A stretch of 64,000 bases of DNA from Isurus oxyrinchus (taxonomy: Eukaryota). The stretch lies in the NCBI GenBank assembly GCA_026770705.1, contig JANJGN010000152.1, forward strand, positions 248,001 to 312,000. Direction: 5' to 3'. Position numbers and translations under genes: made by a program. The notes under the pieces are model-generated. The model was not told the DNA's origin. It made no database searches and saw only the letters and a program-made list of their open reading frames with translations. This document shows, piece after piece, positions 20,678 through 64,000 of this stretch. Position 1 is the first letter of the stretch; each line of letters starts with the position of its first letter.

Positions 20678-20689
20678 CATGCCCCCGGG

Positions 20690-33810: not shown

Positions 33811-36800
33811 TGCTGATACAGGGGTCTAGACTGAAACAAATTGAAGCAGGGCATACTGCAAAGATGACTGATACAGGGCCGAGATTAATCTAAATTGAGA
33901 CAGGGCCTAGTGCAGTGATTGCTGCAGGTCTAGCTGAATATAAGCTGAGACACAGCCTAGTGCATTCATGACAGACTCAGGACTTACATTAATATAAACT
34001 GTGACAGGGCATGGTGCTGTGATTATTGATACAGGTTCAAGATCAGTATATGCTGAGACAGTGCCCTTTACAGTGATAACTTTAAAAAAGGTCTTGATCA
34101 ATATAACCTGAGTCAGTGCCCTTTGCAGTGATTACTGATACAGGGTATAGCTCAATGTAACTGACACATGGTCTAGTTCAGTGTTTACTGATGCATGGTC
34201 TCAATCAATATAAACTCAGGCAATGCCCAGTGCAGTGATTACTGATTTAGGGCTGAGGTAAATATAAAATGAGACCGAGTCTAGTGCAGTGATTACGGAT
34301 ACAGGGTCCAGATCAATATAAACTGAGACAAGGTCTAGCACAGTCATTACTGATACAGGGTCTAGATTAATATAAACTGAGAGAGGGCCTAGTACAGTGA
34401 TTAGTGAAAGATGGTCTGGACTAATATAAACTGAGGCAAGCCAGAGTGCAATGATGACTGATACAGGATTTAGAGCCTGCATCAGTAATTACTGCACCAG
34501 GCCCTGTCACAGTTTATATCATTCAAGATCACATGTCAGTAATCACTACACTGAACACTGCCTCAGTTTATATTTACCTAGAGCCTGTACCAGTAATCTC
34601 TGCACTGGACACGGTCTCAGTTTATATTAATCAAGACCCTGTATCAGTAATCAATGCAATAGATGCTGTCTCAATTGATATTGATCTAGACCTGTATAAG
34701 TAATCATTGCTCTTGACCCTGTCTCAGTTTACATTAATCTTGGCCCCATATCAGTTATCTCTGCACTAGACTCTGTCCCACTTTATATTAGCTTAGCCCC
34801 TCAATCGGTAATCACTGCACTAGTTCCAGTCTGATTTTATGCTAATCTAGTCCCTCCAGCAGTAATCACTGCAAGAGCTTCTGTCCCAGTTATATTTATC
34901 TAGGCCCTGTATCAGTGAACATTTCACCAGGGCATGTCTCAGTTTTTGATGGTTCAGAAGCTGTTTCAGTAATCACTGCACTCAACCCTGTTACAAGATC
35001 TAGATTAATATAGAGTGAGACAGGATCTAGTGCTGTGTTTACTGATACATGGTCTCAATCAATATAAACTCAGACAATGTCCAGCGCCGTGATTATAGAT
35101 ACAAAGCTGAGATAAATATAAACTGAGACAGGGCCTACTGCCATGATTACTGACACAGAGCCTAGATTAATATAAACAGAGAGAGGCTCATTTGCGGTGA
35201 TTACTGATTTAGGGTTGAAATTGATATAAAATGATGCAGGGTCTAGTGCAGTGATTATTGATATAGGGTCTAAATTGATATAAAATTGTGCAGTGATTCC
35301 TGATAAAGGGTTGAAATTAATATGAACATGAGACAAGGCCAAGTGCAATGATTATTGTTACAGGGTCTAGATTGATATAAACTGAGACAGGGCCTAGTGC
35401 TGTGATTTGTGATGCAGGGTTGGATTGATATTAAATGAGACAGGGTCTTGTGCAGTTAATACTGACACAGGCTCTGAAATAATATAACCTGAGACAGGGC
35501 CATTGTCATGATTCGTGATGCAGGTTTGAGGTTAATATGAACTTAGAGAGGGCCTAGTGCAGTGATTACTGATAGAGGGACTAGATTGATATAAATTGGG
35601 CAGGGCATAATGCAGTGATTACTGATACAGGCTTTAGATTAATATAAACTGAGAAATAGTCCAGTGCCATGCTTTTTGGTTCGGGGTGCAAATTGTTATA
35701 ACCAGAACAGAGTCGAGTGCAGTGAATACTGAAACAGCTTCTGAACCAACAAAAACTGAGACATGCCCTGATGAAATGTTCAGTGATACAGGGCCTAGAT
35801 AAATATAACTGGGACAGAAGCTCTTGCAGTGATTACTGCTGCAGGGACTAAATTAATATAAACTCAGACTGGACCTAGTGCAGTGATTACTGATTGAGGG
35901 GCTAAGCTAATATAAAGTGGGACAGAGTCTAGTGCAGAGATAACTGATATGGGGCCAAGATTAATGTAAACTGAGACAGGGTCAAGAGCAATGATTACTT
36001 ATACAGGCCTAGATCAATATCAATTGAGACAGCATCTATTGCATTGATTACTGATATAGGGTCTTGATTAATATAAATTGAGACTGTGTCCAGTGCAGAG
36101 ATTACTGATACAGGCTTTAGGTAAATATAAACTGAGGCAGTGTCCAGTGTAGTGATTACTGACATGGGATCTTGATTGATATAAACTGCGACAGGGCCTG
36201 GTGCAGTAATTACTGATGCAGGCTCTAAATGAATATAAACTAAGGCAGAGTCTAGTGCAGTAATTACTGACAGTGGGCCTATTTCATATCAACTGAGGCA
36301 GGGCCTAGTGCGGTGATTACTGATACAGTGCCTAGATTGATAAAAGCTGAGGAAGGGCAAAATAAAATATAAATTGATACTGAAAAAGGTCTAGATCAGT
36401 GTCAACGTAGACAGTGTCTAGTGCAATGACTACTGACACAGGATCTAGATGAATATAAACTGTGACAGGGTCTAGTGCATTGATTCCTGATAGAGGGCCT
36501 AGGTTGATATAAAGTGAGGCTGGGCCTAGTGCAGTGATCACTGATACTGGATCTAGTCTAATATAAACTAGGGCAGGGGCTAGTGCAGTAAATAGTGATA
36601 CAGGGTCTAGAATAATAAAACTTGTTGCAGGGCGAAGTCCAGTGAGTACTGTTACGGAGTCTGGGTTGATGTAAACTGAGACAGGGCCATGTGTCGTGAT
36701 TACTGATATAGGGTTTAGATTAATAGAAACAGATGCAGGATCTAGTGCAGTGATTACTGACAAAGGGTCCTGATTAATATAAACTGAGACAGGGTCTATT

Positions 36801-39800
36801 GCAGTGATTACTCATAAAGGGCCTAGGTTAATATGAAATGAGACAGGTCATAGTACAGTGATGACTGATACAGGGTCTAGGCAAATATAAAGTGGGATAG
36901 GGCCAAGTGGAGTGATTACTGATACAGGGTCTAGATCAATGTAAACTGGGATAGGGGCTAGTGCAGTGATTACTGATACAGGGTCTGGGCTCCTATAAAC
37001 TGAGGCATTCCCTAGTTCTGTCATTATTGATACAGGGTAAGGGCTAATATAAATGGAGACAGGGTCTAGTGAAGTGATTACTCATAAAGGGCCTGGATTA
37101 ATATGGATGAGACAGGTCATAGCGCAGTGATTACTGATACAGGGTCTAGGGTAATATAAACTGAGACAGGGTCTAGTGCAGTGATTACTGATGAAGGGTC
37201 TAGATCAATATAAGCTGAGAGAGAGTCTAGTGCAGTGGTTACTGATACAGGGTCTAGATTGATATAAAATGAGGCAGGCCATCATGCAGTGTCTACTGAT
37301 ACAGGGCCTAGATAAATAAAAACTAGTGCTTACTGATACAGGATCTAGATCAATACTAAGTGAGAGTGTCCATTGCACTGATTATTATTCAGGGACTAGA
37401 TTAATACAAACTGAGATAGGGTCTAGTGCAGTGATTCCTGATGCAGGGTCTGAATCAATATAAACTGAGACAGGTCCAAATGCAGTGAGTACTGTTACAG
37501 GGTCTCGGTTGATATTCAGTGATGCAGGGCATAATGCAGTGAATACTGATACAGGGTCTAGCAAAATATAATCTGAGACAGGCTCTAGTGCAGTGATTAC
37601 TGTTACGGGGTCCACATTAATATAAGCTGAGACAGTGTCCAGTGTAGTCATTACTAATAAAGGGTCTAGATTGATAGAAAATGAGCCAGGGACGAGTGCA
37701 GTGTTTACTGAGCATGGTGTTGATCAGTATAAACTCAGATAATGTCCAGTGCAGTCTTTACTGATATAGCGCTGAGATAAATATAAACTGAGACTGGGCC
37801 TACTGCAGTGATTACTGATACAGGGTCTAGATTAATATAAGCTGACACAGGATCTAGTGCAGTGATTACTGATACAGTACCTGGACAAATATAATCTGAG
37901 ACATCATCTAGTTCTGTCATTACTGATACAGGGTCTGGACTAATATAAACTGACACTGTGTCCAATGCATTGAATACTGATACGGGACATGGATTGATAT
38001 GAACTGAGTGCAGATATTACTGATACAGGACCTAGATAAATATAAACTAGGACACAGGCTGGGGCAGTGATAACTGATACAGGGTCTAGATACATGTTAA
38101 CTGAGATAGGGCCAAGTGTAGTGATTACTGATACAAGGCCGAGTTTAATATAAACTGAGACAGGGCCTGGTGCAGTGTTCACTGATACAGGGCCTAGATA
38201 AATAAAAATGAGGACAGCAGCTATTGCAGTGATTACTGACACAGAGCCCAGATCAATACAAAGTGAGAGTGCCTGTTGCACTGATTATTATACATGGTCT
38301 AGATTAATATAAACTGAAATAGTGTCTAGTGCAGTGATTTCTGATGCAGGGCCAGTATCAATATAAACTGAGAAAGTGTTCAGTGCAGTGATTGCTGATA
38401 AAGGGTCTAGATTAATATAAACTGAGACAGGGCCAAATATCAGTGATTACTGTTACAGGGTCTAGGTTGACACGAAGTGGGGCAGGGGATAGTGCAGAGG
38501 TAACTGATACAGGGTCTAGAACAATATAAACTGAGACTGGGTCTAGTGCACTAATTAATGTTACAGGGTCCTAATTCATATATACTGAGTCAGCACGTAC
38601 TGCAGTGATTACTGATATAGGCACCAGATTAAGATGAACTCAGGCAGGGCCTTCTGCAGTGATTAGTGATACAAGGTTGGATTTATATAAAATCAGACAG
38701 GCTGTATTGCAATCATTACTGATACAGGGTCTGGATCGATATAAACCAAGACAGTGACCAGTACAGTGTTCGTTTACAGGGTCTAGACTAATATCAACTG
38801 ATACAGAGCCTAGTGCAGTGATTACTGATACAGAGTCTAGACTGATAAAAACCGAGGCAGGGCATAATGCAGAGATTAATGATACAGGGTCTAGATTAAC
38901 ATAAACTGACACAGAGCCCAGTGCAGTGATAACTAATGCAGGGCGAAAATAAATATAAACTAGGACAGAGGCTAGTGCAATGATTAATGATACAGGATCC
39001 GGATCAATATAAACTGAGATGGTGCCCAATGCAGTCATTATTAATACAGGGTCTAGATTAATAGAAACTGAGGCAGGGTCGGGTGCTGTGTTTACTGATA
39101 CATGCTCTTGATCAATTGAAACTCAGACAGTGTCCAGTGCAGTGTTTACTGATACAGGGCTGAGAGAAAAATAAACTGGGACAGAGCATAGTGCAGAGAT
39201 AACTGACACGTGGTCTAGAAGAATATAAACTGAGACAGGGCTTTGTGCACTGATTAGTGTTACAGGGTCCAGATTAATACAAACTGAGACAGGGCCTAAT
39301 GCAATGATTACTGATACAGGGTCTAGGTTAATTTAAACTCAGACAATGTCCAGTGCAATGTTTACTGATACAGGGCTGAGATAAATACAAACTGAGACTG
39401 GGCCTACTGCAATGATAACTGATACAGGGTCTAGATTAATATAAACTGAGACAGGGTCGAGTGCAGTGATTACTGATACAGTATCTGTACTAATATAAAC
39501 TGAGACAGTGTCCAATGCATTGATTACTGACACAGGATCTAGATTGATATGGACTGAGTGCAGATACTACTGATACAGGGCCGAGATAAATATAAACTAG
39601 GACAGGAGCTAGTGCAGCTATTACTGATACAGGGTCTCGATCAATATAAACTGAGACAGTGTCCATTGCAGTGATTACTGATGCAGTGTCTGAATCAATA
39701 TAAACTGAGACAGTACAAAAACAGAATTACCTGGAAAAACTCAGCAGGTCTGGCAGCATCGGCAGAGAAGAAAAGAGTTGACGTTTCGAGTCCTCATGAC

Positions 39801-42505
39801 CCTTCAACAGAACTGAGTGAATATTAGGAGAGAGATGAAATATAAGCTGGTTTAAGGTGGGGAAGGGGTGGGGGGAGAGAAGTCGGGGGGTGTTGGTGGT
39901 GGTGTTGGTGTGGTTGTAGGGACAAGCAAGCAGTGATAGAAGCAGTTAATCAAAAGATGTCACAGACAAAAGAACAAAGAGGTGTTGAAGGTGGTGATAT
40001 CTAAACAAATGTGCAAATTAAGAATGGATGGCAGGGCACTCAAGGTACAGCTCTAGTGGGGGTGGGGTGGAAAGACTAGCTGGGTATAAAAAAATTAAAA
40101 ATAATGGAAATAGGTGGGAAAAGAAAAATCTATATAAATTATTGGAAAAACAAAAGGAAGGTGGAAGAAACAGAAAGTGGGTGGGGATGGAGGAGGGAGT
40201 TCAAGATCTAAAGTTGTTGAATTCGATATTCAGTCCAGAAGGCTGTAAAGTGCCTAGTCGGAAGATGAGGTGCTGCTCCTCCAGTCTGCGTTGGGCTTCA
40301 CTGGAACAATGCAGCAAGCCAAGGACAGACATGTGGGCAAGAGAGCAGGGTGGAGTGTTAAAATGGCAAGTGACAGGGAGGTTTGGGTCTTTCTTGCGGA
40401 CAGACCGCAGGTGTTCTGCAAAGCGGTCGCCCAGTTTACGTTTGGTCTCTCCAATGTAGAGGCGACCACATTGGGAGCAACGAATGCAGTAGACTAAGTT
40501 GGGGGAAATGCAAGTGAAATGCTGCTTCACTTGAAAGGAGTGTTTGGGCCCTTGGACGGGGAGGAGAGAGGAAGTGAAGGGGCAGGTGTTGCATCTTTTG
40601 CGTGGGCATGGGGAGGTGCCATTGGTGGGGGCTGAGGAGTAGGGGGTGATGGAGGAGTGGACCAGGGTGTCCCGGAGGGAACAATCCCTACAGAATGCCA
40701 CCGGTTGGGGGGGGGGGGGGGTGCGGTGGGGTAGGGGTGGTGAAGGGAAGATGTGTTTGATGGTGGCATCATGCTGGAGTTGGCGGAAATGGCTGTGATA
40801 TCTTTTGATTATCTGCTCCTATCACTGCTTGCTTGTCCCTACAACCACACCACCGCCTCCCCCCACCACAACTTCTCTCCCCCTCCCCCAACCCACCCAC
40901 CCCCCCACCCCCACCTTAAACCAGCTTATATTTCACCCCTCTCCTAATATTCACTCAGTTCTGTTGAAGGGTCATGAGGACTCGAAACGTCAACTCTTTT
41001 CTTCTCCGCCAATGCTGCCAGACCTGCTGAGTTTTTCCAGGTAATTCTGTTTTTGTTTTGGATTTCCAGCATCCGCAGTTTTTTTGTTTTCATAACTGAG
41101 ACAGTGTTCAGTGCAGTGATTACTGATACAGGCTCTAGGTAAATATTAACTGAGACAGGGCCTGGTGCAGTGATTACAGTGACAGGGCCTAGTTTAATAT
41201 AAACTGAGACAGGGCCTGGTGCAGTGTTCACTGATACAGGACATAGATAAATATAACTGGGACAGGGGTTGTTGCAGTGATTACTGCTGCAGGGACTAAA
41301 TAAATACAAACTGAGACTTGGTCGAGTGCAGAGATAACTGAGACAGGGCCAAGATCAATAAAAATTGAGGCAGGGTCTAGTGCACTGATTAATGATACAG
41401 GTCTAGATTAATATAAACTCAGACAGTTTCTAGTGCAGTGATTACTGACACAGGGTCTAGATTGATATATACTGAGGCAGGGCATACTGCAGTGATTCCT
41501 GTTTCAGGGTCTTGAGTAATATAAACTGAGACAGGCTCTAGTGCAGAGATTACTGATACAGGGTCTAGCTTAATATAAACTGAGGCAGTTTCCAGAGCAG
41601 TGATTACTGATACAGGCTCTAAATTAATATAAACTGAGACAGCGGCTAGTGCAGTGATTACTGATACAGGGACTAGATTAATATGAAGTAAGACAGGCTA
41701 TCATGCTCGTATTACTGATACAGGTACTATATTAACATAAATTGAGCCTGCATCTAATGCAGAGATTACTAATACAGGGTCTAAATCAATATAAATTGAG
41801 ACACTGCCTTGGACATTGAATACTGATACAAGGTCTTGATTAATAGAAGCTGAGGCAGGAGCAAGTGTAATGATTACTGATACAGGCTCTAATTTGATAT
41901 AAACTGAGGCAGAGCATAGTGCAGTGATTACTTATATAGGGTCAAGATAAGTATAAGCTGGGACAGAGTCAAGTGCAATGATTACTGATTAAGGTTATAG
42001 ATTAATATAACTTGAGATGGGCTCTACTGCTGTGATCACTGATTCCAGCTCTTGATTAATATAAACTAAGACAGGCTCTACTGCAGTGATTACTGTTTCA
42101 GGGTCTAAACTAATAGAAACTGAGACAGGGTTTGTGTAGTGATTACTGAAGATTAATATAAACTCAGGCAGGGTCTAGTGCAGTGATTCAGCATCTAGAT
42201 TACTAAAAACTGAGACTGGATCCAGTGCAGTGTTTACTGATACAGCGTCTAGATTTATATAATTTGAGGCAGGGTCTAGCGCAGAGAAGACAGATACAGG
42301 GTCTGGATTATTATAGACTGAAACAGGGTCTGGTGCAGTGATTACTGACATAGCGTCTAGATTAATACAAACTGAGACAGGGTCTACTGCAGTGATTACT
42401 GACACAGTGTCTAAATTAATATAAACTGAGACAGTGTCTAGTGCAGTGATTCCTGAATTCTGCTCTGGACGAATATAAACTGAGACAGGGCCAAGTGCAA
42501 TAATT
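33810..42505 (+). repeat. 27-bp/54-bp dimeric satellite array (CAGGGTCTAGTGCAGTGATTACTGATA + CAGGGTCTAGATTAATATAAACTGAGA)
   Basis: Roughly 270 monomers; contains an inverted block (34468-34992) and a Penelope insertion. Confidence 0.97.
39715..41093 (-). mobile_element. Penelope-like element, 5'-truncated, with inverted terminal repeats
   Basis: ORF 40701-40201 with CxxC pairs and GIY-YIG (LVYCIRCSQCGRLYIGETKRKLGDRFAEH...LEEQHLIFRLGTLQPSGLN); about 39716-39965 inverted vs about 40795-41055; flanking aactgagacagt is a possible TSD. Confidence 0.95.
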
Positions 42506-43759
42506 ACTTCATCATTGACGCCCGTATCCCAAGAACAAATTAAAACGCTGCAAAATACTGCGGATTCTGGAAAACTAAAGCAAGACAAAAAAAATAACAC
42601 TCAGCAGGTCAGTGGGCATCAATAGAGTGAGAAAAAGATCAAACTTGCAGGTCGATGACAGATGCAAAATCTCCCTTGGTATTACTCTGTAGAGCAGGAC
42701 TGATCTTCCCACTATCCTTCACCAATATTCATTCTTCAACTAAAATTACATATTATCTAGTCATCTTTCACAGCTTTATTCATGGGATCTTGCTGTGCAC
42801 AAATCACCGGATGGATTTCCAACATCACAGCAGTGACGAAACTTCAACAAAACTACGAGTTTTAAGGATTTTAGGGTTTCATCAGGTCATAATCAACATT
42901 CTTTCAATGCAAACTCTTTCTAAGTGTTAGCATTTTAAAATGCTAGTTGTGATACGTTGAAAACTGTGAGACTAATATAATAATAGGTCGCTCCTCTGGC
43001 TGCTGTTTTAAACTGTCCGGTTTAAATGGGTTAAGTCTTCCAATAAATTGACATTCAGTGGAATTCTAGCCTGTTCAAAGATTCTTCGTTGATTGTGATA
43101 GGACAATTTTCAGAACTGAATTATTAATTTAAATGTAATTTTAATTGTTTGAAATAAATAACATCTGTTCTAATGGATCTTGAAGTGGTTTCTATTAATT
43201 TTGTACCAACTGTCAATATTCTTAAAATAAACCCTTGTTTTGAGTTGGAACCAATCAATAAGTGTCTGTGTTTATCTGGTTTTGCTGCCATGGACACTTC
43301 ATTGAAACCAGTGAGGCGTTTATGTAAATAAACACAGAAATAGAAGTCCCAGATTAGATTCTGGAGACACAAAAACACAGCAAATATTTCCCCATTAACA
43401 AAGCACAGAAATGGAGTCAAACATGCAAATACATCAACAGATTCCAGTAGCAATTGTTTTTTGGACATTTTTAAAATCAGTTATGTGAGAATTATGTCAC
43501 GATGACATCTGTGTTGAGAATTAAGAAAGATTCCCACTTATCATGAAATATAATGTCACGGCAAATGTGTTTGTACAGATTTCCTGTATCCTCTGTCTCT
43601 CTCTCTGTCTCTTTCTCCTCTCTGGTTCTGTGTCTTGTCTCTCCACCATGGGTCATTGTCTTCACTCCACAACATGAAGTGAATGTCTAGCCAATGTATT
43701 CTCCCAGCACGATTCAGACACTTCAAACTAAATGGATCTAATGAAATGGATTGGAATCC

Positions 43760-51992: not shown

Positions 51993-53694
51993 AAGGGTAA
52001 AGAGGCAGAAAAATCACACAAACACACATGTTTTTCTATTTCAAAATGTATCCTCTCTCTGAGTCCTCTCTGCTAGTCCGTCTGTAATTCTTTCTATCCA
52101 TCCATCCATCCATCACAATATTATGATGTGTTGGAGAGATCCTCAATGAGCTATTGATGCCAACAGGGTGTCAGAGAAGCTGGATAACTTTTCTTTCCTG
52201 GGAGATTGGAACAGTTCACATAGGTTCACAGCTTAGAAAAATGAAACTGACTCCAGTGTTGTTGCTCGGTAGATTTGTCATAAATAAGCCTTGTTGACAA
52301 TGTTAAGGGTTTGAAGTTGGCATGCAGCCAAGCGGTCAGTACTGAGGAAACAGATCTTTCATTTACTGCACAAACCGGCAGAGGCTTCCTGTAAATAACT
52401 TTGGGCATTCGAGCCTCCCTGACTGCAGCCGGCTGGCTTGCTGCCAAATACTCTGTGGGGCAGATTAGCCTGGATATGAATGAACAAAATGGGATTCAGC
52501 AATTCAAACAATATTGCTTTCAGTCATACATGGAATACACATTTTAAATGGCATTTTATCCAGCGAAATATTTTAATGAGTGCCGTGTTCACTGAGGTTA
52601 AACACGATCAGAAAATATTAAATTGACCATTTACCAGTTAATTTATATTATTTCTAAGTAAAGGGCATCCCAGTTATTAAAGCCTGTTTATTAAGAACTT
52701 CATGAAGTGCGAGAGAGCAATATTGATGGTCCCAATGTCCCAGTCCAATGAAATGAGTGCAATGGCAAAACTTAAAAGAAATTAAATTGAATGAAATTTG
52801 TTGAATTGCCTTAATTCCGCAGGAATTCCTTGAATATCTCCGAGTTGTGCACCTCATTTAACCTGAGGCGCCTCTTATTCCTGATTAGCGCCGTGTACTG
52901 TACAGTTTAATTTGTGCTGATTTCGATTATTTAACAGTCCCTCTCATAGCTGCCAATAAGTGGAGAAATGATCAGTTCATGACCCGCTTCAGTGGAAGAT
53001 AAAACATTTATTCTTGTGCTATTGTGTAATATGCCCCAAAGTCCTGATATCCTGTGTTCCCAATACCAGTGAATGGTAGATAGCCGGTGGCCAATAGAAT
53101 TAGCTGCAATGATTTGGATGATGAAGGATAACTTTACTGATCTCCGTGTCCGTTCTGATTCATTAACTTCTCTGTCAAAAGTTGATGTAAAATTTTACGT
53201 TTCTCTGTCAATTTACTGTTTAGTTATCAGGCCGGTGGTCTTCTTTTTCCGCTAATTTCCACAGGGCTGTCTTCGGGTCAGGAGCAATTCGAGAAATGCA
53301 AGGAGGGACATTGTATAATGTGAGGAGTTTCTTCTTATCTCTGGACCCAAACTGTATGGCCATAGCCACCCATTTTGTAAATAATATCACTTTGTTCATC
53401 GCCCGCATTTAATTACATAAATCAATAATAATTCCAATGACTAATGATACTTTATTGCTGTAATGAGATAGAGACCCGGAGTTGCTGCAAAACAGACTGA
53501 CAGCCCCTTTATTCCCTGTTAATGTAACTTATTTTTTTTAGATTCAACCCGCTGTGAAGTAGTGCAGAAATAACTGGACTTAATTTACATTTGAATTAAT
53601 CATTTTTATGAACTATATCCCGATACAGATAAAATGCCCACTTTTAACAATAACCTATTGTAAATATCTGAGTCCATTCTGTTGGGGATGTGTA

Positions 53695-53785
53695 AGATGG
53701 GGCGTGGATCCTGTCGCCGCCTCTACCAGGGAATCAACAGGCGGCGCCTGGAATCCCGCCCCCTTCTGCCGGGTATTTAAATGCC
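53695..53785 (+). promoter_or_regulatory. IgH VH promoter: GC boxes and TATA (TATTTAAA 53774-53781), no octamer seen
   Basis: ggggcgtgg and cccgcccc upstream of a TATA about 95 bp before the ATG. Confidence 0.6.
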
Positions 53786-53872
53786 GCTCACTGGGACCGG
53801 AATCCAACAGTCCGGGAGCTGGTTTGTTCACTGAGTTCTGGACAGAACCATTTTCCCCAGATGACCAGAAGG

Positions 53873-54350
53873 ATGAGGCCGGCGATTTCTCTCAGTTTGT
53901 TGCTGACTTTCTTATCCCGTGAGTAGTTTTTATTGTCCAAGTCTCTCACTGTTACTGTCTGTGTTAGTCTCTCTCTAGAATGTTACAGAGTCAAGAATCA
54001 TTTCAACAGGGTTAATCTTCGGGGTTTTTGATATATTTTTACAGGTGTCCAGTCGGATGTTGTGTTGACTCAGCCAGAGGCAGAGACCGGGCGTCCCGGA
54101 GGCACCCTGAGACTGACCTGTAAAACCAGCGGCTTCGATCTTGACAGCTCCTACATGAACTGGGTCCGACAGGTTCCCGGACAAGGGCTGGAATGGCTGG
54201 TTTACTACGGTGATTCATCGGACAACAGCTATGCCCCAGCAATTAAGAATCGATTTACGGCGTCCAAAGACACTTCAAGGAGCATCTTCTCCTTGGACAT
54301 GACGAACTTGAAGATTGAAGACACCGCCATCTATTACTGTGCCAGAGAGT
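53873..54350 (+). CDS. IGHV: IgM-type heavy-chain V gene: leader exon 53873-53918 plus V exon 54045-54350, open
   Basis: [71 protein letters not shown]...RFTASKDTS...[10 protein letters not shown]; GT/AG phase-1 intron; elasmobranch IgM VH hallmarks. Confidence 0.97.
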
Positions 54351-54389
54351 CACAGCGAAAGGAACCAGGGCTGGACCCGAACAAGAACA
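54351..54389 (+). promoter_or_regulatory. VH 23-RSS (CACAGCG-23-ACAAGAACA)
   Basis: Spacer counted. Confidence 0.95.
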
Positions 54390-54755
54390 GATCGAGAGGG
54401 ACTCAACAACTTCCATCGTAATCTGACGGTCAGTACTTGTTTTAAATGTATTATTAACTGTAATGATCAGACCCAGACAACAAGCCACTTGTGACAAAAG
54501 TAAAACAGCAAATTTAACAGGAAACCTAACAAACCAATCGATATAATGGGCTGAGCTTTTCGCTGTGTTTATATTTACTGATAAGTTTCCGCAATTACAG
54601 ACCTGGATATAATACCCATTTTAACCTGCCTGACACTTGGAGGAGGGTCTCTATTCATTGAGTTTTGTAAATTGCTGCATGAATTCTAAACCGGATCAGA
54701 AGTAAACGACTATTTGAAGTGAAGATTGGGATGCAGCACTGAACAGAGCAGGTGC

Positions 54756-54835
54756 AGTTTTTGTGCGTCTGTATTTCACTGTGATACTACAGTGGGTCAC
54801 AGTGCTGTGCACAGCGACATCCTCATACAAAAACC
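54756..54835 (+). other. IGHD: DH1 segment (ATACTACAGTGGGT, 54784-54797) with 5' 12-RSS and 3' 22-RSS
   Basis: AGTTTTTGT-12-CACTGTG / CACAGTG-22-ACAAAAACC. Confidence 0.96.
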
Positions 54836-55137
54836 TCAGCGAAAGAGTTTGTTCAAACTGGTGATCAATATCACAGCAGGAACGTCAAAGAAAATGAGAG
54901 TTAAGTAAAATAATGGGTAGAGGTTTGCAAAAAGGTATAAAAGTCTTCCGCTTTGTTCGTGTTGACGGACACTCTAAATCTGCACAGAGTCTTTAAAAGT
55001 ATTCCAATTGCATTTATAAATATATTCACCAGCACAGCTTGAAATATCTCACCGATTCGCTCTTAAGTGAGTCGGAATCAGGTTTTTGTGAGTGCAGTGA
55101 AATTAAATCTTTGTATTTTCAGTGAACAGTCTGCCGC

Positions 55138-55219
55138 AGTATTTGACATGGTGTGTCTCACTGTGATAACTGGGATGGCCCACAGTGTTACATTCCCTGG
55201 GCTGTGCCATACAATAACT
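55138..55219 (+). other. IGHD: DH2 segment (ATAACTGGGATGGCC, 55166-55180) with 5' 12-RSS and 3' 23-RSS
   Basis: AGTATTTGA-12-CACTGTG / CACAGTG-23-ACAATAACT. Confidence 0.94.
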
Positions 55220-55547
55220 GTCCCTGCACGAAAAAGACAGAAATCCACCATTATTTTAAATATTCATAAGTCAGGGGCAAAGTAAGTTCACGATAAATCT
55301 TCACGAAATTATATTTGCGTTGTAGTTATCTTTAGGTATTCATCAATGATCCTCATGTTTTACATTTCACAGAGTAACATATGAACATGTTCTTGTAAGC
55401 AGCAACCGATTAATGTATAATTATCACAGCTTTTCCATCTTAAACCATGTTTTTTGGGCAGCGCTGGACATAACTAATACTTCACTGTAAATATAGTTGG
55501 GTTGTAAAAGCGAGCACTGACCCAGGCAGACTCAATTAATGCTGAGG

Positions 55548-55625
55548 GGTTTTTGTATTGACAGTAACTGCTGTGGATCGCTACGGACTACTGGGGACAA
55601 GGGACCATGGTGACGGTGACTGCAG
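55548..55625 (+). other. IGHJ: JH segment (55576-55625, IATDYWGQGTMVTVTA) with 12-RSS and GTAAG donor
   Basis: GGTTTTTGT-12-TGCTGTG; WGQG motif; splice donor at 55626. Confidence 0.96.
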
Positions 55626-58600
55626 GTAAGAACCATGCACTTATTTAGTAACTGCTTTATTTGAGTCTTTGCTTTATATTTTTGTCTATTTTAATAACTG
55701 ATTCGTTTACTGAAACTTGGGTTTGCTGGATTCTGTATGGAGATATTTTACAATGTTTCATGTGTTTCTGCTGAAATTGAGTTATATAATTCGGCTGTGT
55801 CTCAACAAAAAGGGATTCAATCCCTGGCTGTGGTGATTTGGTGTTTATCTGCTGAATTTACTATGTGGCCGGGTTATGTGAAGTATCTAACATTTGTGAA
55901 AACAGTTTGACGTTCCTGCAATGTTTAATCTCGGTGACATATAATGGCTGCGGGTTTTACCATCTGTTGCACAAAGGTTTAAATATGTTTGAAATCAAAC
56001 CCAATATCAGTAACATATGCTTAAGTTTCAATGTTAATTTATTGAACATGTTCCGCCTACTCACAATGCTGTTGACATTATTCCATATTTCTCTTTAGTT
56101 TAATTATTCATTAATTTGGTGACGAGCGGGTTGTCTGGTTTTGATATTGAGATTTTCTTGCAATGTTACATTGGATTCTGTTGGAATAGTTTGTGGAATT
56201 GAGCTGCTTCTCCATGAAACGGGTTTCAGTCCCTCAGTGATGTGTTTTGGTGTTTTTCTCCTGATGAGATTGTGTGTCTGGGTGACTTTGAACAAGTAGA
56301 ATTTGTGGAACAGTTTGGCGGTTCTGCATTGTTTCTGCTTTGTTTAAACTCGGTGATATTGAGCGGTTACACGTTTTGTGATTGAAAGGAAACAGTCTAC
56401 GCGTTTGTTTCTGCTTGAAGCGCCATTGTCAGCAGAAAACGGGCAGAATTCAGAAATGGGGGAAAAGTGTTTAAAGATGCGTTAGAGCATTTTGTTTTTA
56501 TTTTAAGTCATAACTGCAGATTAAACTAAACCATGGATTAAGATGCTCAATCAGAACATAATTCGTTACTGCAATAAGAAACTATATAATTAACAAGTTT
56601 TCAAATTGTAGAGTAAAATTAATATAATTCAAGCAATTATAATGTGGTAATATTTCTCCATATTGACTGAACAGCTTTCATGTTAACCTAATTGATCATT
56701 AATCGCCTTTCACAATTCTGCTGTGCACTGCGCACTATTAACTTGATCGGGAAAATTTTTAGGGTGGAATCATTTTGTGATTATGTATGAAAACATTTCA
56801 ATGAGAGTATACTGATTCTACAGAATTGTTCACTTCCACAAGAGATTTTGAATTCTTTAAATCCCTGATAACGTTTGTATTGATTTAAAAACGAGTTTGA
56901 CATTGCAGGTTGGCAATATGTCTATCCGGTTATTACATTCTTTCTGTGCAGCCGTAACCATATTATTCCTTCAATGTCATTGGGATTGGATAGCGAGATA
57001 ATTGTCACTAATCTAATCGTAAACAGTTTTCTGGGGGGTGGAATTCGCTGGCAGTCAAGGAATTGTTCTTATTTTTTTTGAACTGCAGGAAGGTGCAAAC
57101 TGCGTATGAATAGAGATTGACAAGGAAACGCTTGAAATTCGAACAGATTAATTTAATTGCAAACATTAATGTTAGTTTTGAACTTAATAACAACATTCTG
57201 TCTCCCATTGCTGTACTGTGCACAGGACAGAATTATAGGAGAAGAACAGATTATATCTGAAATTCATGCTTAATACTTATTAACTATTAAATTGAAGAGC
57301 AAAATCTCTAATCGTTTTGCTGGTTATATTTCAGTGGCGCAGGTGATCTGAATAATTTTTTCTCATCAAATTGTATACTGATTAATTTGGATCGTCTTTC
57401 AATGAACAATATATTTAACAATTAAATTATAGTGATTTTATCAAGGAAGCACTTTTATTGATAATAAGTAACTGCGAGGAACATTTTTTTACATGTAATT
57501 TTGAGTTAAGACAAGTTTGCTTTAGCAAACAAATGATGTTACAGTTCGTAGACACTTGATGTGATGTTACCTCGGCCAGATTTGAAAGTATTTAAAATAT
57601 TCCACTCATAAATTCGTCTTGTGAATTACTCGATGAGAATAGATGGAATTTATGATTTCTCAATGCGTTCAGAAACACGCATAGTTTACAATTTTGTATG
57701 TTAAAACAGAGCAGTGGAAGTAAAAGTAAAATAGTAAATAGTGATTAAATTTAAGTAAAATTGATATTCTTGCCTGAAGGTTACCATCTCGTAATTTGAA
57801 GTTTATTGTTTAACATTGTTTCAGTGTCAAGTTGATTTAAATAAACCCCAATTATTTCACAAAGTACCAGGGAGAAACAAATTTTCAATTTTTGAAAACC
57901 ATATTTTTCATATTGTAGAGTAGAAATCAATTAACAAGGAAATAAATTGACAATAACAAAATAATTAACTTACAATATAATATTAGTGATAATTAATTCA
58001 ACATAAATGAACTCCAACAGTTAAATAGTATACTGTTCATTATTGTGAATGCAAATTCTCAGTGGAGAGAATTTTTAATTTTATCCAAAATGAATTTAGA
58101 AAAGAATATTTTTCTTATTCAGCTGTGCTCTGATCGATAAGGTGTTTCATCTCGATGATTTTATTGGTTATATTTATCCCTAAAATCAAATCAAATCAGC
58201 AGGTAGTTGGTTTCAATGTGAATGTTTTCTGATTTGTTTAATTCTTACCCTGTCATTGATTCTCTGTTACGGACACCAAATTACCCTGAATCTGTAATAT
58301 TTGCTGTGCTCACTTTCAGGGTAACTTAAATCTTACATTGTTTGGAGATTGGAGATTGACAGGGAGAATTAGTTGGACTTCAAAGGGAGTTTTGAAATGA
58401 AAATCAGATTAATTTCAAAGAAGTTATGGAATAATTGGAGTAAATTGACCATTGATTAATTAGAATCAAACAGCTTGAATGAAATAGACAGATTGAACAG
58501 ATCTATCTGCTGGGAACTCGCTTGTTGCACCATTTGTGTCTGTTCTGTTTCTGTGCGTGTGGTCACTGTGCTGGGACCAGAAATCTTCTTGACTGGTTGT

Positions 58601-58939
58601 TAACCTTCTGGTTCGCTCTCCTGTATTTCAGGAAGTGCAATTTCATTTATTTATTCAAAAAATTGTATCTGTGAGAAATGTGAAGGTTTGATTTTCTGAC
58701 CAGGCCCCTCAGAAATGAGATACCCAATCCATTGTAACAGTCAGAAAGGACAATTCAGAAATGACAGACAGACTGTCGAAGGAGGTTTGGTCAATTTTAA
58801 ACCAGTGATGTAGCTGTCTTTGGAGTGTTTGGTTAGGCAATGCAGAGAGAGCTTTATTCTATTTTAATCAGTGCTGTAGCAGTCCTTGACCTATTTGGTT
58901 GGACAGTGTGGATGAAGAAATTAGCCTGTATCTTATTTT

Positions 58940-59525
58940 TAATCCTATCATAGGATGTTGGGGACGCTGGCAAGGCCAGCATTTGTTGCTCATCCCTAAT
59001 TACCCCTTGCGGAACTGTTGATATGCCGCTTCCTAGAATAAGAATAACTCCCTGTGTACTCAGTGCTGATCAGTAGGGAGTTCCGGGATTTTGACCCATT
59101 GACAGTGAAGGAACGACGATATAATTCCAAGTCAGGATGGTGGGTGCTTTGGAGGGGGACGTACAGAGGGTGGTGTTCCCCAGCACCTGCTGCCCTTGTC
59201 CTTCTAGTTAGGAGAGGTTGTGGGTTTTGAAGGTGCTATCGAAGGAGTCTTGGCGAGTTGCTACAGTCCATCCTGTATATGGTACATACTGCTGTCACTG
59301 TGCGTCAGTGGAGGAGGGAGTGAATGTTTTAGGTAGCGGATGGGGTGCCAATTCTGTAGGCTGCTTTGTCCTGGATAATATCGAGTTTCTTGGGGTTTTT
59401 TGATGTTTCACTCATTGAGGCAATGTGCCTTGGAGATGGTGAGTTGTCTTTGGGTGATAGGAGTTGAATTACTCGCCACAGAATTCCCAGCCTCTGACCG
59501 ACTTTTGCAGCTGCAGCATTTATAT
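58940..59525 (-). mobile_element. LINE 3' part, same family as 20690-23130
   Basis: Reverse complement of 22700-23120-type sequence plus the shared tail. Confidence 0.8.
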
Positions 59526-60254
59526 TAAAAGTGGATTGAACCTTCTCCTGGGCATATTTGATGCGACAATGTAGAGGGAGTTTTATATCAAACCAGTGCT
59601 GTACCTGACCCGGAGTGTTTGCCAGTTTAGTGGAGAGATGGCTTTCTGTTGAATTCCACCCTTGCAGCTGATGGCAGGATTGTACTGGGGAGGAGTGGGG
59701 GCTTTAACTCATATCTTAACTTGTCCTGTCCCTGACCTGAGAGCCTTCTCACAGCAGAGATCAGCATCGAACTAACTAGCTGTGAGTCCTCCAGCCAGAT
59801 CTGTGAAAATAAATTGTTCCATTGCTCGGGTGAAATTACGCACATTAATTGTTTTAGCAATATTTTTGAAGAGAACATACATATATTTTAATGAATTAAT
59901 TATGTTTCACATTTTGAGTATCAGAAAATCATTGAATGTGAGTGACCTGAACTTGAACACAATTTCAGAGCAAACAGAATCAGGGAGTGACAGTGAGGCT
60001 CCAGAGAGCAGCGCCTGTTCTGATCTGATCAGAGGCTGCAAGCTTTTTAAATGATTGAAATGGACAATGACCAGCCTCCTGCTCCAAATAGTCAGCCACG
60101 AGGGATTTGGGGAAATGGAGCTGCCATCAAAAACTGAGCCATTGGATTGCCGCCTGCAGGGGGAGGAATGAATGACAGAAATGAGAGCATGAGGAGGACA
60201 TTCGGCCTTTTGATCCTTCCCTGCGTTCATTCAGATCATGGCTGATCTACCTCG

Positions 60255-61420
60255 ACACACTCAGTCTCTTTACCACACACCTCACTCGCTCACTCTCTCT
60301 GTCACGCACGCTTTCTCTCACACACGTGCACTCTCTCTCACATGCACTCTCTCTGACAGACACACACTCTCTATTTCTCCCTCTATCACACACATGCACC
60401 ACACACACACACACGCACACAAATATTCTTTCTTTCACACACAAACTCTCTTTAACATGCACACACTGTCTCTCACGCATTTCCTCTCTTCTACTCACAC
60501 TATCAAACAGGCACTCACATTCTCTCATACACATACATTCACAACTACACACTGTCTTACACATGTGCCCACTTACTCTCTCACACACACATGCACTCAC
60601 TCTTTCTCATACATGTACTCTCCTACACACATTCTCTCTCTCACACATGCATACCCACTCTCTCTCTCACATACATGTACCCTCTCTCCCACACACAGAC
60701 ACACTCTCACCTATGCACACACACGCTCTCCATTCTCTCTCTCACACACATACAGACACATCATACACTCTCTCACATGAGCATCCTCATTGTCTCTCTC
60801 TCACGCACACACACAAACACAAACACATTCCATCTCAAACATACACACTCTGTTTCTCTCACACATGCACTGTCTCTCATTCTCTCTTTCTCTCTCCCTC
60901 TGACACACACCGTGGCTCACTCTTTCACACACTCTTTCTCTCTCTCACACACTCACACGTTCTCTCTCTCACACACACTCTCTCCCCCCACACACGCGTA
61001 CTCTCTCTCTCACACACTCTCTCTCACACACTTATACTACCTTTCACTCACACCCGTACACATATACTTCCTCTCCCTCTCTCTCTCACTGTCACACACA
61101 CAGTCGTTCTCTCTCTCACACACACACACACACAGTCGCTCTCTCTTATACACACATACTCTCTCTCCCACAACACACACTTTCTCTATCTCAGACATTC
61201 TTACAAGTATGCTCCCTATGACACACACATACATACACTCTCCCTCTTTCTCACACAGACACTTTCTCTCTCTCACACACACACAGTGGCTCTCTCACAC
61301 ACACACATACACACACACACGCGTGCACTCTCTCACTCTCTCTCTCTCCCTCTCTCACACTCACTCTCTCACACACACACACTCTCTCTCACACACTTTT
61401 TTTTCTCTCTCTCTCTCACA
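60255..61420. repeat. CA/CT-rich low-complexity tract
   Basis: Direct reading. Confidence 0.95.
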
Positions 61421-61422
61421 AA

Positions 61423-61795
61423 CCTATAAAATCCTTACAGGACTAGACAGGTAGATGCAGGAAGGATGTTGCCAATGGTGGGGGAGTCCAGAACCAGAGT
61501 TCACAGTCTGAGGATATGGGGTAGACCATTTAGGACTGAGATGAGGAGACATTTCTTCACCCAGACAGTGGTGAGACTGTGAAATTCCTTACCACAGAAA
61601 GTAGTTGAGACCAAAACATTGTATGTTTTCAAGAGTGAGTTAGATAAAGAACTTGGGGCAAAAGGAATCAAAGGGTATGGGGAGAAAGCGGGAGCAGGTT
61701 ATTGAGTTGGATGATCAGCCATGATCATAGTGAATGGCTGAGCAACTCGAAGGCCCGAATGGCCTACTCCTGTTCCTAGTTTCTATGTTTCTATA
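61423..61795 (+). mobile_element. CR1 3' fragment
   Basis: ggggagtccagaaccag...gagatgaggagacatttcttcacccag...ggcccgaatggcctactcctgttcc(tttctatg)n. Confidence 0.9.
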
Positions 61796-62257
61796 TAAAT
61801 ACACATTCAATTGCATGTACACTCTCTCTCACGCACACATACACACATTCTCACACACAGATGTGGGCTGAAAAGATTCATTGCAGAATAAAAATCCGCT
61901 AAGCTGCAGGCATGTTCATTGTTCTATTTCTGATGTATTTTTGTGTAAAATGAAATTACACAAGTGGCATCACTATATATGTGGAGAATTTCCAAGTGTG
62001 GAACCAAACGCAAAGAAACAAGAGAAAGGGAGGGTGTGGCAGAGACCACGGCCGCCTGGATCCCCATCACTGGTGCACACTTGGTGCAATATGTCTGCAC
62101 GGCCCATCCTGGTTTTGCTGTAACCTTCCCCTCCAGCCCCCTCAGTCTGCCTATTCGCACACTGACACGGGTTTCTCAAAGAAAGGCATCGGCATTAAAG
62201 CAGCTGGCCAGTGATCTACACTGCTGCCTGACTTTACACAGCCAGTGTTATGGAAAG

Positions 62258-62422
62258 ATGGAGAATCAGGACAGGATCTTTGGGGAGGAAGAGGAGGAAG
62301 TGTAGGTGGTGGAGCTGAATGGCGGAGCCCCCAGCTCAGCTGTGGGCAACAGGCAACGGAAAGCTGAGCCAAAGTGGAAAATCATCTGGAGAAACATCGC
62401 CTTGATGAGCCTGCAGCACCTG
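62258..62422 (+). pseudogene. Stearoyl-CoA desaturase (SCD/SCD5-like) N-terminal fragment
   Basis: MENQDRIFGEEEEEV*VVELNGG...PKWKIIWRNIALMSLQHL matches the SCD motif VWRN(I/V)(I/V)LMSLLHL; in-frame stop at 62303; cut off by a simple repeat. Confidence 0.75.
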
Positions 62423-62424
62423 CG

Positions 62425-62885
62425 CACCCTCACTACCCACAATAACTCACCCTCACTCACTCACCCTCACTCACTCACCCTCGCTCACTCACCCAACTTC
62501 ATTCATCCTCATTCACTCACCATCAATTGCTCATTCACCCGCACTCACTCACCCAGCCTCATTCACACTCATTCACCCACCCTCAGTCACCCACCCTTAT
62601 TGATCCACCCTCAATTATCCTCACTCAAACTCACTCACCCACCCATCGTCGCTCACCTACATTCACTTACACTCAATAACTCATCCACCCACCCTCACAC
62701 ACCCACTCACCCTCACTCATATCCCCACCCTCACATAACCACCAACCCTCACTCACCCACATTCAGAAACCCACCCACGCTCACTCACCACCAACCCTCA
62801 CTCATTCCTTCATTCATCCACGCACCCCCGCTCTGTCATTCAGTCATCCTCACCCTGTCAATCAGGCACACGCTCACTCACACGA
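62425..62885. repeat. (CACT/CACC)n low-complexity tract
   Basis: Direct reading. Confidence 0.9.
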
Positions 62886-63019
62886 TCACTTTTCCTAAAT
62901 CGGTGTATGGGAAGGCGAGAACTGCGGGGAAGAGAGACCTGGAAGTGAGGACTGAGGCCTAGCAATTCCAGAAAGTGGAGCATGGCCCAAGGGAGCATCG
63001 AGCGTCGGTGGAAAATGCA

Positions 63020-64000
63020 GAGAGGCGGGGCTAAAGCGCAGAGAGCCTGGGGGAAAGGGCAGGCAGGTGGGGGGAAGGAAAGAGAGTTGGGGAAAAGGGT
63101 AGCGATCCAGTGGAAAGTGCATATAGATGAGGCAAAGGAATGGGCAGAGCCGGGGGAAGGGCAGGCACCCGTGGAATAAGTGCAGAGAGCTATGGGAGAA
63201 AGGGTAGAGAGGCGGGAGGGGGAAAGGGCAGGGCGGCAGAGATGGGAAAGGGCAGAGAGGCGGGAGGGGGAAAGGGCAGAGAGAGGAGAGGGGGCAAGGT
63301 CAGAGTGGGGGTATGGGCAAGGGCAGAGAGGGGGGAGTGGGCAAGGGCAGAGAGTGGGGATTGGGCAAGGGCAGAGGGACGAGAGGGGGGAAAGGGCAGA
63401 GAGGCGGAGGGGGGAAGGGCAGAGCAGCGGAGGGGGAAAGAGCAGAGAGGCAGGAGGGGGAAAGAGCAGAGAGGCGGGAGAGGGAAAGGGCAGTGAGGGG
63501 ACAAAATGGTTAATGAACTAGGGAAAAAGTCAGTGAGCCGGACAAAAGCACAGAGTCGTGGAGTAAATGCAGAGAGCTGGGGGAGAAAGGACAGAGAGGT
63601 GGGAGGGGGAAAGAGTAAAGAGGAGGCGAGCAAAGGGCAGAGAGGCGGGACGTGGAAAGGGCAGAGAGGCGGGACGTGGAAAGGGCAGAGAGGCGGGACG
63701 TGGAAAGGGCAGAGAGGCGGGACGTGGAAAGGGCAGAGAGGCAGGAGGAGGAAAGGGCAGAGAGGCAGGATGTGGAAAGGGCAGAGAGGCGGGACGTGGA
63801 AAATGCAGAGAGGCGGGACGTGGAAAGGGCAGAGAGGCAGGAGGGGGAAAGGGCAGAGAGGCGGGAGGTGGAAAGGGCAGAGAGGCGGGACGTGGAAAGG
63901 GCAGAGAGGCGGGACGTGGAAAGGGCAGAGAGGCAGGAGGGGGAAAGGGCAGAGAGACGGGAGGGGGAAAGGGCAGAGAGGCGGGAGGTGGAAAGGGCAG
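63020..64000 (+). repeat. G-rich 24-bp minisatellite GGGCAGAGAGGCGGGACGTGGAAA, running off the window end
   Basis: Degenerate from about 63020, highly regular from about 63630. Confidence 0.95.

What the first reader, a model, noticed from the sequence alone, without database searches (positions are those of the whole stretch)
53873..55625. IgM VH-D-D-JH cassette with a TCR-delta-type RSS grammar (23 / 12-22 / 12-23 / 12)
Seen: all downstream-facing RSSs are 22/23 and all upstream-facing ones are 12. Under the 12/23 rule this permits V-J, V-D1-J, V-D2-J and V-D1-D2-J by deletion, as in TCR delta. It also makes VH, D1 and D2 compatible with TCR D-delta/J 12-RSSs, and TCR V 23-RSSs compatible with DH/JH. 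Inference: a wider CDR3 length range and a mechanistic route to Ig/TCR chimeric chains.
Basis: partly seen in the sequence, partly recalled or inferred. Interest (0 to 1): 0.75.

Follow-up and report, generated by a model that had tools for sequence, protein, structure and literature searches.

The report
Shark IgM gene with flipped D2-J signals
This is an unrearranged shark IgM heavy-chain gene cluster in which the short stretch between the second D piece and the J piece appears to have been turned around, giving the gene the joining rules of a T-cell receptor instead of those usual for shark antibodies.

Summary
Window 53873-55625 holds a split leader, an intact VH, two D segments and one JH. 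The six recombination signals read V-23 / 12-D1-22 / 12-D2-23 / 12-J. Simulated sequence never gave more than 3 signal-like hits in 1300 nt; the window gives 7.

I first took this for the textbook shark layout. That reading did not hold. Contigs of public runs of the same organism show paralogues at least 95% alike in which a D2-like coding end abuts the J-type 12-signal heptamer. In them the J coding end abuts the reverse complement of this window's D2 23-signal. The breakpoints fall exactly at 55181 and 55575, the ends of the 395-nt signal-bounded D2-J interval.

This is the mark of a germline RAG hybrid-joint inversion. A precedent exists for the horned-shark D1-D2 interval (PMC2193153). 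The scan reported the same flip earlier on another piece of this genome (s1-871160).

The flip newly permits V-to-J and D1-to-J joins. The Ig/TCR-chimera inference is mostly not specific to this grammar, and such chimeras are already published. No repertoire evidence was obtained. That 12-D2-12 / 23-J is the usual layout rests on recall and on unchecked scan notes.

The parts
53774..53781 (+). TATA-like motif (TATTTAAA), about 90 nt upstream of the leader ATG
   Evidence: Motif scan. No exact octamer was found in 53300-53873, only two 7-of-8 matches at 53583 and 53589. The promoter role is inferred.
53873..53918 (+). Leader exon ([15 protein letters not shown].., phase 1). An alternative in-frame ATG lies at 53861.
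   Evidence: Sequence. The leader aligns with those of Heterodontus HV01 and a Chiloscyllium protein. The splice joint 53918->54045 (GT..AG) is present in 3 of 3 RNA-like runs and 0 of 1 DNA-like run. Those contigs carry 0-4 differences, so they may come from close paralogues.
54045..54350 (+). VH exon, intact (Cys25, Trp39, Cys98, YYCARE)
   Evidence: Translation. Pfam V-set at 1.3e-17. 81% identity to a Chiloscyllium punctatum protein and 76% to Heterodontus francisci Ig heavy chain V region HV01. Alignment.
54351..54389 (+). V 3' signal, 23 spacer (CACAGCG / ACAAGAACA), 13 of 16
54756..54783 (+). D1 5' signal, 12 spacer, 15 of 16
54784..54797 (+). D1 coding, 14 nt, open in all three frames
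   Evidence: Frames read by eye.
54798..54835 (+). D1 3' signal, 22 spacer, 16 of 16 (perfect heptamer and nonamer)
   Evidence: Its spacer holds the reverse complement of part of the nurse-shark primer RSS-D1 printed in PMC2435157 (compared by eye).
55138..55165 (+). D2 5' signal, 12 spacer, 13 of 16, weak nonamer
   Evidence: 73% alike to the D1 5' signal over 33 nt.
55166..55180 (+). D2 coding, 15 nt. It ends ..GGCC, where CC could be P nucleotides of ..GG.
   Evidence: Paralogue contigs show a 13-nt D2 without the final CC (loose ends). The P-nucleotide reading is inference.
55181..55575 (.). 395-nt signal-bounded D2-J interval. It is inverted relative to paralogous clusters. It carries the 23-signal (55181-55219) at its D2 end and the 12-signal (55548-55575) at its J end.
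   Evidence: Joint '55181 <-> 55579 opposite strands' in X11 and X16. X5 loose ends behind 55168, behind 55575 and before 55579. Length.
55576..55625 (+). JH coding (..DYWGQGTMVTVTA), splice donor GT at 55626
   Evidence: Contigs of X11 and X16 leave the window exactly at 55625 and run on into non-window sequence (table 7). By my reading this looks like the start of a C-mu exon 1.

Best explanation
This is a germline, apparently intact IgM-type heavy-chain minilocus (leader, VH, D1, D2, JH) of a shark. By earlier scan notes its C-mu lies beyond the window end.

Its 395-nt D2-J interval, bounded by two recombination signals, has been inverted. Most likely RAG cut both signals in a germ cell and rejoined each signal end to the other segment's coding end, forming two hybrid joints. 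The 12-signal that usually follows D2 now precedes J. The 23-signal that usually precedes J now follows D2.

The resulting grammar is V23 / 12-D1-22 / 12-D2-23 / 12-J, the TCR beta/delta type. D2-to-J joining stays legal, and V-to-J and D1-to-J become legal under the 12/23 rule.

The best two signals in the cluster are the D1 3' 22-signal (16 of 16) and the J 12-signal (perfect nonamer). Both D2 signals have weak nonamers. I therefore predict a raised share of V-D1-J junctions that skip D2, and some D-less V-J junctions.

Shown here: the segments, the signals, their spacers, and the relative inversion at both ends.
Inferred: the direction of the change, the RAG mechanism, and all effects on the repertoire.
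For: Anatomy and spacers. The excess over chance is (7 hits in 1300 nt, against at most 3 in 200 simulations).

IgH identity of the V.

Segment spacing of 433, 368 and 395 nt fits the roughly 400 bp given for nurse-shark miniloci (PMC2435157, passage).

Relative inversion:
- One contig in each of X11 and X16 joins the reverse complement of 55224..55181 to J coding from 55579.
- X5 contigs run from a D2-like coding end into CACAGCA, the reverse complement of this J's heptamer.
- X5 contigs run from 55575 into the reverse complement of a D2-like coding end and its 5' heptamer.
- X5 contigs run into 55579 from the reverse complement of the 55181 heptamer and the start of its spacer.
- Both breakpoints coincide with heptamer borders.

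Precedent: two horned-shark clusters related by inversion of the signal-terminated D1-D2 interval, read as a germline hybrid joint (PMC2193153, passage).

Scan notes (leads, not support): s1-871175 and s1-900113 give 12-D-12 / 23-J in other clusters. s1-871160 reports the same 395-base flip on another piece.
Against: I could not read any paper that states the usual spacer layout of shark IgM clusters. Eight ids were not held, and ten searches gave no such passage. 'Usual = 12-D2-12 / 23-J' therefore rests on my recall and on unchecked scan notes.

Only the ends of the interval are shown to be inverted: 44 nt at one end and short loose ends at the other. The interior is not shown.

No listed contig bridges 55180/55181 or 55575/55576 in the window's own arrangement, and 137 pieces were not shown. 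The arrangement therefore has no independent read support from me.

The direction of the change is not tested.

V-exon contigs in the RNA-like runs differ from this VH at 1-6 places, so expression of this copy is not shown.

TCR-beta shows that 12/23-legal V-to-J joins can still be blocked ('beyond 12/23', PMC2642999, abstract in the listing).
Confidence: 0.72

Rival explanations
1. This is an ordinary shark IgM cluster. The 23 / 12-22 / 12-23 / 12 layout is the normal one, and the contigs with the other orientation are the variants.
For: This was my own first reading (stated). No paper I could read gives the spacers. The same grammar was noted on at least one other piece of the genome (s1-871160).
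Against: One search shows the opposite arrangement in three runs (X5, X11, X16), assigned to three different samples and studies in the run list. Several scan notes on other clusters give 12-D-12 / 23-J. By my recall, the published horned-shark and nurse-shark layouts and all bony-vertebrate IgH loci have a 23-signal on JH.
Confidence: 0.1
2. The TCR-type grammar is the ancestral state kept by this cluster, and the 12-D2-12 / 23-J clusters are the flipped, derived ones.
For: The inversion is symmetric, so cannot give its direction. TCR beta/delta and this cluster share the grammar. Lewis and Wu discuss signal swapping as a route between locus types.
Against: The flanks and signals of the two forms are at least 95% alike, which points to a recent event. 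A recent event in a minority copy is more simply a change in that copy. The window's D2 and J coding ends are each 2 nt longer at the junctions than the paralogue's, and D2 ends in a GG|CC palindrome, as expected if the window copy carries the hybrid joints.
Confidence: 0.08
3. The flip is an assembly artefact or a somatic event captured in the assembly. The 395-nt piece was mis-oriented, or came from a lymphocyte hybrid joint.
For: I have no bridging read for the window's own arrangement. X5 holds only 0.33 of the sampled words.
Against: An assembler has no reason to break exactly at two 7-nt heptamers. A rare somatic product would not win a consensus. A scan note reports the same 395-base flip on another piece (s1-871160; not checked by me).
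Confidence: 0.05

Closest known systems
Cartilaginous-fish IgM heavy-chain minilocus (VH-D1-D2-JH-Cmu), as in nurse shark and horned shark
   Same: One split-leader VH, two D segments and one JH about 400 bp apart. The V is 74-81% identical to the four shark IgH V regions aligned, all from the search. The J is spliced onward at its donor. The architecture is as described in PMC2435157 (passages).
   Different: The signals after D2 and before J are exchanged relative to what I recall as the usual layout, and relative to paralogues seen. C-mu is not inside the window.
Horned-shark variant cluster with inverted D1-D2 interval (Kokubu et al. 1988, as told in Lewis and Wu 2000, PMC2193153)
   Same: Two clusters related by inversion of a signal-terminated intersegment piece. 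This is explained as a germline RAG hybrid joint that swaps a 12- and a 23-signal.
   Different: Here the D2-J interval is flipped, not D1-D2. This is the swap that turns the whole cluster into a uniform TCR-type grammar and legalises V-to-J. The 1988 paper itself was not held, so I know it only through the commentary.
TCR delta / TCR beta locus grammar (V23, 12-D-23, 12-J)
   Same: Identical spacer logic. Asymmetric D signals allow 0, 1 or 2 D segments per junction, as described for TCR delta in PMC3457774 (passages).
   Different: The V is an IgH V. No TCR C or TCR-type V lies in the window; one search finds only one Ig-like domain. It works like TCR delta on paper but is not a TCR locus.
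Shark Ig/TCR trans-rearrangements (IgM/IgW V to TCR-delta D-J; Criscitiello 2010, Deiss 2019, Ott 2021)
   Same: They are attributed to close linkage of IgH clusters and TCR alpha/delta (PMC12227049, passages).
   Different: Those events use the VH 23-signal, which every cluster has. The flip adds only D2 3' and JH as possible partners. The three primary papers were not held.

Membership tests
Shark IgM heavy-chain minilocus | Split leader plus VH exon encoding an intact V-set domain of IgH type | tested here: met
   Leader intron joint in 3 of 3 RNA-like runs.
Shark IgM heavy-chain minilocus | Two D segments and one JH, each with signals, a few hundred bp apart on the same strand | tested here: met
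   Start-to-start distances are 433, 368 and 395 nt.
Shark IgM heavy-chain minilocus | C-mu exons downstream of JH in the same cluster | not testable with these tools
   No Ig-like domain other than VH lies in the window. Scan notes s1-866983 and s1-866871 place a C-mu beyond 64000. Contigs leave J at 55625 into non-window sequence.
Shark IgM heavy-chain minilocus | Usual spacer layout 12-D2-12 / 23-J (recalled, not read in any paper here) | tested here: not met
   The window has 12-D2-23 / 12-J. This is the point of the finding. It is a variant, not grounds to exclude the cluster from the family.
Germline RAG hybrid-joint inversion | Two related loci differ by orientation of the piece between two signals | tested here: met
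   opposite-strand joint at 55181/55579 in X11 and X16, plus matching loose ends in X5.
Germline RAG hybrid-joint inversion | Breakpoints exactly at the heptamer/coding borders | tested here: met
   the breaks fall at 55181 (first heptamer base) and 55575 (last heptamer base). The coding sides differ by 2-3 nt.
Germline RAG hybrid-joint inversion | Whole interval reverse-complementary between the two forms | tested here: inconclusive
   Only 44 nt at one end and loose ends of 12-23 nt are seen.
Germline RAG hybrid-joint inversion | Present in germline DNA, not only in lymphocytes | tested here: inconclusive
   The flipped form stands in the assembly. The tissue of origin and raw reads were not available. 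The usual form recurs in three runs, of three samples and studies.
TCR delta/beta locus | V23 / 12-D-23 / 12-J spacer grammar | tested here: met
TCR delta/beta locus | TCR-type V and C genes | tested here: not met
   The best V matches are shark IgH V regions. No C exon lies in the window.

The most novel reading that the evidence does not exclude
This would be a functional IgM cluster, lying within about 240 kb of TCR-delta V segments, that a germline RAG hybrid joint converted from antibody-type to TCR-type joining rules. It would be a living example of the single inversion that separates IgH grammar (12-D-12 / 23-J) from TCR beta/delta grammar (12-D-23 / 12-J). It would produce D-less and single-D IgM chains. 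Its JH and D2 could also exchange with TCR segments, which ordinary clusters cannot do.
Probability: 0.25. Interest if true: 0.75.

Novelty: new variant of a known kind. Interest (0 to 1): 0.5.

Why it matters
How the antibody heavy-chain and TCR loci came to carry different 12/23 signal layouts is an old question. The only worked example I could find in print is the horned-shark D1-D2 inversion of 1988.

A D2-J flip in an otherwise intact cluster gives a natural within-genome comparison. Near-identical V, D and J segments sit under two grammars. Repertoire sequencing sorted by cluster could therefore measure two things directly. One is what the grammar alone does to D usage and CDR3 length. 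The other is whether a 'beyond 12/23' block exists in sharks.

The finding also shows that RAG has kept reshaping these loci in the germ line.

Tried and rejected
Textbook reading. I first held that this is the textbook shark layout (stated). I dropped it after and the notes.

Literature on the usual spacer layout.
- I read passages of PMC2435157, PMC2193153, PMC12227049, PMC3457774, PMC5192425, PMC1131882, PMC2188853, PMC8692893 and PMC13433984. None states the spacers of D2 and JH in a shark IgM cluster.
- PMC4279169 has no mention of signals.
- PMC2191167 is held only as abstract and references.
- Not held: PMC3222143, PMC7909615, PMC454840, PMC7039070, PMC4874517, PMC2590587, PMC3190574, PMC332511.
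- My statement that a D2-J flip is not in print rests only (terms: hybrid joint, shark, germline, inversion, immunoglobulin). That search returned no paper with 'hybrid joint' and shark together other than PMC2193153. The primary shark papers could not be read.
- Supplements are closed. Table S1 of PMC12227049 (coordinates of IgH clusters near TCR alpha/delta) may list this cluster.

Other checks.
- Internal repeats in 54300-55700 gave nothing bearing on the flip beyond the likeness of the two D 5' signals.
- A look-up of earlier findings by sequence was blank.
- A degenerate scan of metagenome contigs for the FR2 codons found 0 stretches.
- Rearranged V-D-J junctions of this VH cannot be seen in contigs. 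No V-to-D or V-to-J coding joint was listed in the RNA-like runs, and this proves nothing.
- I searched the V exon alone. The joined leader+V model was not searched.

Full report
WHAT IS THERE

Window 53873-55625 holds a complete unrearranged heavy-chain variable cassette on the + strand. The leader exon is 53873-53918, followed by a 126-nt GT..AG intron. The V exon is 54045-54350 and translates without a stop to a 101-residue domain ending YYCARE.

Pfam places the domain in V-set at E 1.3e-17. In the protein search, 50 of 54 candidates passed E 1e-10. The best were shark proteins: 81% identity to a Chiloscyllium punctatum protein, 77% to a Scyliorhinus torazame fragment, and 76% to the Heterodontus francisci Ig heavy chain V region HV01. 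The alignment keeps both cysteines and the tryptophan.

D1 is 54784-54797 (14 nt), D2 is 55166-55180 (15 nt), and JH is 55576-55625. JH reads ..DYWGQGTMVTVTA and has a GT donor. No other Ig-like domain lies in the 64-kb window. Earlier scan notes place a C-mu beyond the window end; I did not test this.

THE SIGNALS

Scores are matches out of 16:

| Signal | Spacer | Score |
|---|---|---|
| V 3' | 23 | 13 |
| D1 5' | 12 | 15 |
| D1 3' | 22 | 16 |
| D2 5' | 12 | 13 |
| D2 3' | 23 | 14 |
| J 5' | 12 | 14 |

All six keep the CAC of the heptamer.

Ten hits were found in the whole window. Seven are in this 1.3 kb; the seventh is a cryptic hit inside D1. The other three are at the minimum score.

In 200 first-order Markov simulations the mean was 1.38 hits per 64 kb. 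No simulation had more than 3 hits within 1300 nt.

HOW MY READING CHANGED

I began by taking this for the standard shark layout.

Laying contigs of four public runs of the same organism on 53600-56000 changed that. Three runs, X11, X15 and X16, behave as RNA. All three carry the leader-intron joint 53918->54045, and the DNA-like run X5 does not.

In X11 and X16, one contig each joins the reverse complement of 55224..55181 to J coding from 55579. That stretch is this window's D2 23-signal plus 5 nt of flank.

In X5, four loose ends tell the same story from both sides:
- A D2-like coding end (13 nt, not identical to this D2) runs into CACAGCA, the reverse complement of this J's heptamer.
- A contig that follows this J's 12-signal up to 55575 runs on into the reverse complement of a D2-like coding end and its 5' heptamer.
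- A contig entering J at 55579 comes from the reverse complement of the 55181 heptamer and the start of its spacer.

So the organism has paralogous clusters at least 95% alike in which D2 carries the 12-signal and J the 23-signal. The two forms differ by the orientation of the piece between 55181 and 55575. That piece is 395 nt and ends exactly at the two heptamers.

HOW IT MOST LIKELY AROSE

An inversion of a piece bounded by two signals, with breaks at the heptamer/coding borders, is what RAG produces when it makes two hybrid joints instead of a coding joint and a signal joint.

The same explanation was given for two horned-shark clusters related by inversion of the D1-D2 interval. It was proposed there as a way for 12- and 23-signals to be swapped in evolution (Lewis and Wu 2000, PMC2193153, passages read). 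The 1988 source paper was not held.

At both junctions the window's coding ends are 2 nt longer than the paralogue's. D2 ends in GG|CC, which could be two P nucleotides. This is a hint, no more, that the window copy is the derived one.

I infer the direction of the change mainly from three things:
- The 23-J form recurs in three runs.
- Unchecked scan notes give 12-D-12 / 23-J for other clusters (s1-871175, s1-900113, s1-868742).
- I recall that published shark IgM clusters and all bony-vertebrate IgH loci have a 23-signal on JH.

I could not read a paper that states the shark layout (see Tried and rejected).

A follow-up of this scan reported the same 395-base flip on another piece of this genome (s1-871160). 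So the scan has found this before on other DNA. I cannot tell whether that piece is a second haplotype copy or a duplicate cluster.

WHAT IT SHOULD DO

In the usual layout, V-D1, V-D2, D1-D2 and D2-J are legal pairs, while V-J (23/23) and D1-J (22/23) are not. After the flip all six pairs are legal.

Three nonamers depart from the consensus at position 5 or 6: V 3', D2 5' and D2 3'. A passage in PMC1131882 calls these positions essential. The D1 3' signal is perfect and the J signal has a perfect nonamer. The newly legal D1-to-J pair therefore joins the two best signals of the cluster.

I predict frequent D2 skipping, and I rate this inference at about even odds. Legal pairs can still be blocked, as for V-beta to J-beta (PMC2642999, abstract in the listing).

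In nurse shark any adjacent pair can start rearrangement, and thymocytes carry many partial IgH rearrangements (PMC2435157, passages). An effect in T-lineage cells is therefore conceivable.

THE CHIMERA INFERENCE

IgM and IgW V-to-TCR-delta D trans-rearrangements are described as common in sharks. They are tied to close linkage of IgH clusters with TCR alpha/delta (PMC12227049; PMC3457774).

A scan note puts a TCR-delta supporting V 175 kb beyond this window's end (s1-868554; not tested). That fits the linkage.

These events use the VH 23-signal, which every cluster has. The flip adds only D2 3' and JH as partners for TCR segments.

WHAT THE READS DO NOT SHOW

All four runs were contigs.
- No V-to-D or V-to-J coding joint was listed for the RNA-like runs.
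- V-exon contigs differ from this VH at 1-6 places.
- Two differences, 53860 and 53879, are present in all four runs.

Expression of this copy and its junction types therefore stay untested.

No listed contig bridges either junction in the window's own orientation, and 137 pieces were not shown. I have no independent read support for the assembly at those two points.

Contigs of X11 and X16 leave J exactly at 55625 and continue into sequence that is not in the window. By eye this reads like the start of a C-mu exon 1. It fits IgM usage by this J family but not by this copy in particular.

VERDICT

The best explanation is an intact IgM minilocus whose D2-J signals were swapped by a germline hybrid-joint inversion (confidence 0.72). 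It is a new variant of a known kind of event. It is of moderate interest because it offers a natural test of what signal grammar alone does to a repertoire.

Noticed in passing
not in the window; seen when contigs of X11 (record 8) and X16 (record 20) were laid on window 54309-55613: A transcribed paralogue has the V end, its 23-signal and about 76 nt of flank joined directly to the 23-signal that precedes J. Both D segments are missing. With two 23-signals it could not rearrange legally. The join (54427/54429 to 55224/55222) is not at a signal border. The same join is in two runs of different samples, so it is probably germline.
   Followed up: partly
not in the window; X5 joint 54783->55585 with 21 letters between: A paralogue in DNA-like run X5 has the D1 5' 12-signal followed at once by 21 other letters and then J coding. 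It looks like a germline-joined D-D-J (V-DDJ) cluster. Its depth of 20.5 is close to the 14-20 of single-copy parts of that run.
   Followed up: no
window 55626-64000 and beyond: No C-mu exon lies in the 8.4 kb after J. Scan note s1-866983 treats the C-mu beyond 64000 as an orphan with no V, D or J within 6.2 kb upstream. This cassette, about 12-13 kb upstream of it by those numbers, is the likely partner, which would make the J-C intron about twice the 6.3-6.8 kb given for nurse shark.
   Followed up: no
window 60238-61454 and 62306-63633: There are long simple-sequence tracts in the J-C intron. One is a CA/TC-rich array giving long His/Thr/Ser/Leu pseudo-ORFs. The other is a G-rich array (GC 0.58, AT skew 0.39 in 62001-64000), which another scan note calls switch-like.
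   Followed up: no
window 20679-23016 (+) and 40204-40701 (-): These are decayed retroelement pieces. Weak Pfam matches, below the curated cut-offs, were found to the endonuclease-reverse transcriptase domain (E 2.4e-05) and to RVT_1 (E 2.6e-04). An ORF with a GIY-YIG domain (E 7.1e-05) has a similar C-terminal peptide in the ORF at 32617-33324, which suggests Penelope-like elements.
   Followed up: partly
window 32221-42600, minus strand: Many ORFs repeat a ..GPVSVYI.. / ..PVSVITAL.. peptide motif, which suggests a dispersed or tandem repeat family across about 10 kb. Strong GC skew lies in 30-42 kb.
   Followed up: no
window 29767-29896: This is a 130-N gap. A lone signal-like hit at 29910 (score 13) lies right beside it in CA-rich sequence and is probably chance. 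The gap was left alone.
   Followed up: no
window 54350/55576: An untrimmed direct V-to-J join with no added bases would read ..GAG TGA.., an in-frame stop. Productive D-less joins would therefore need trimming or N addition (read by eye).
   Followed up: no
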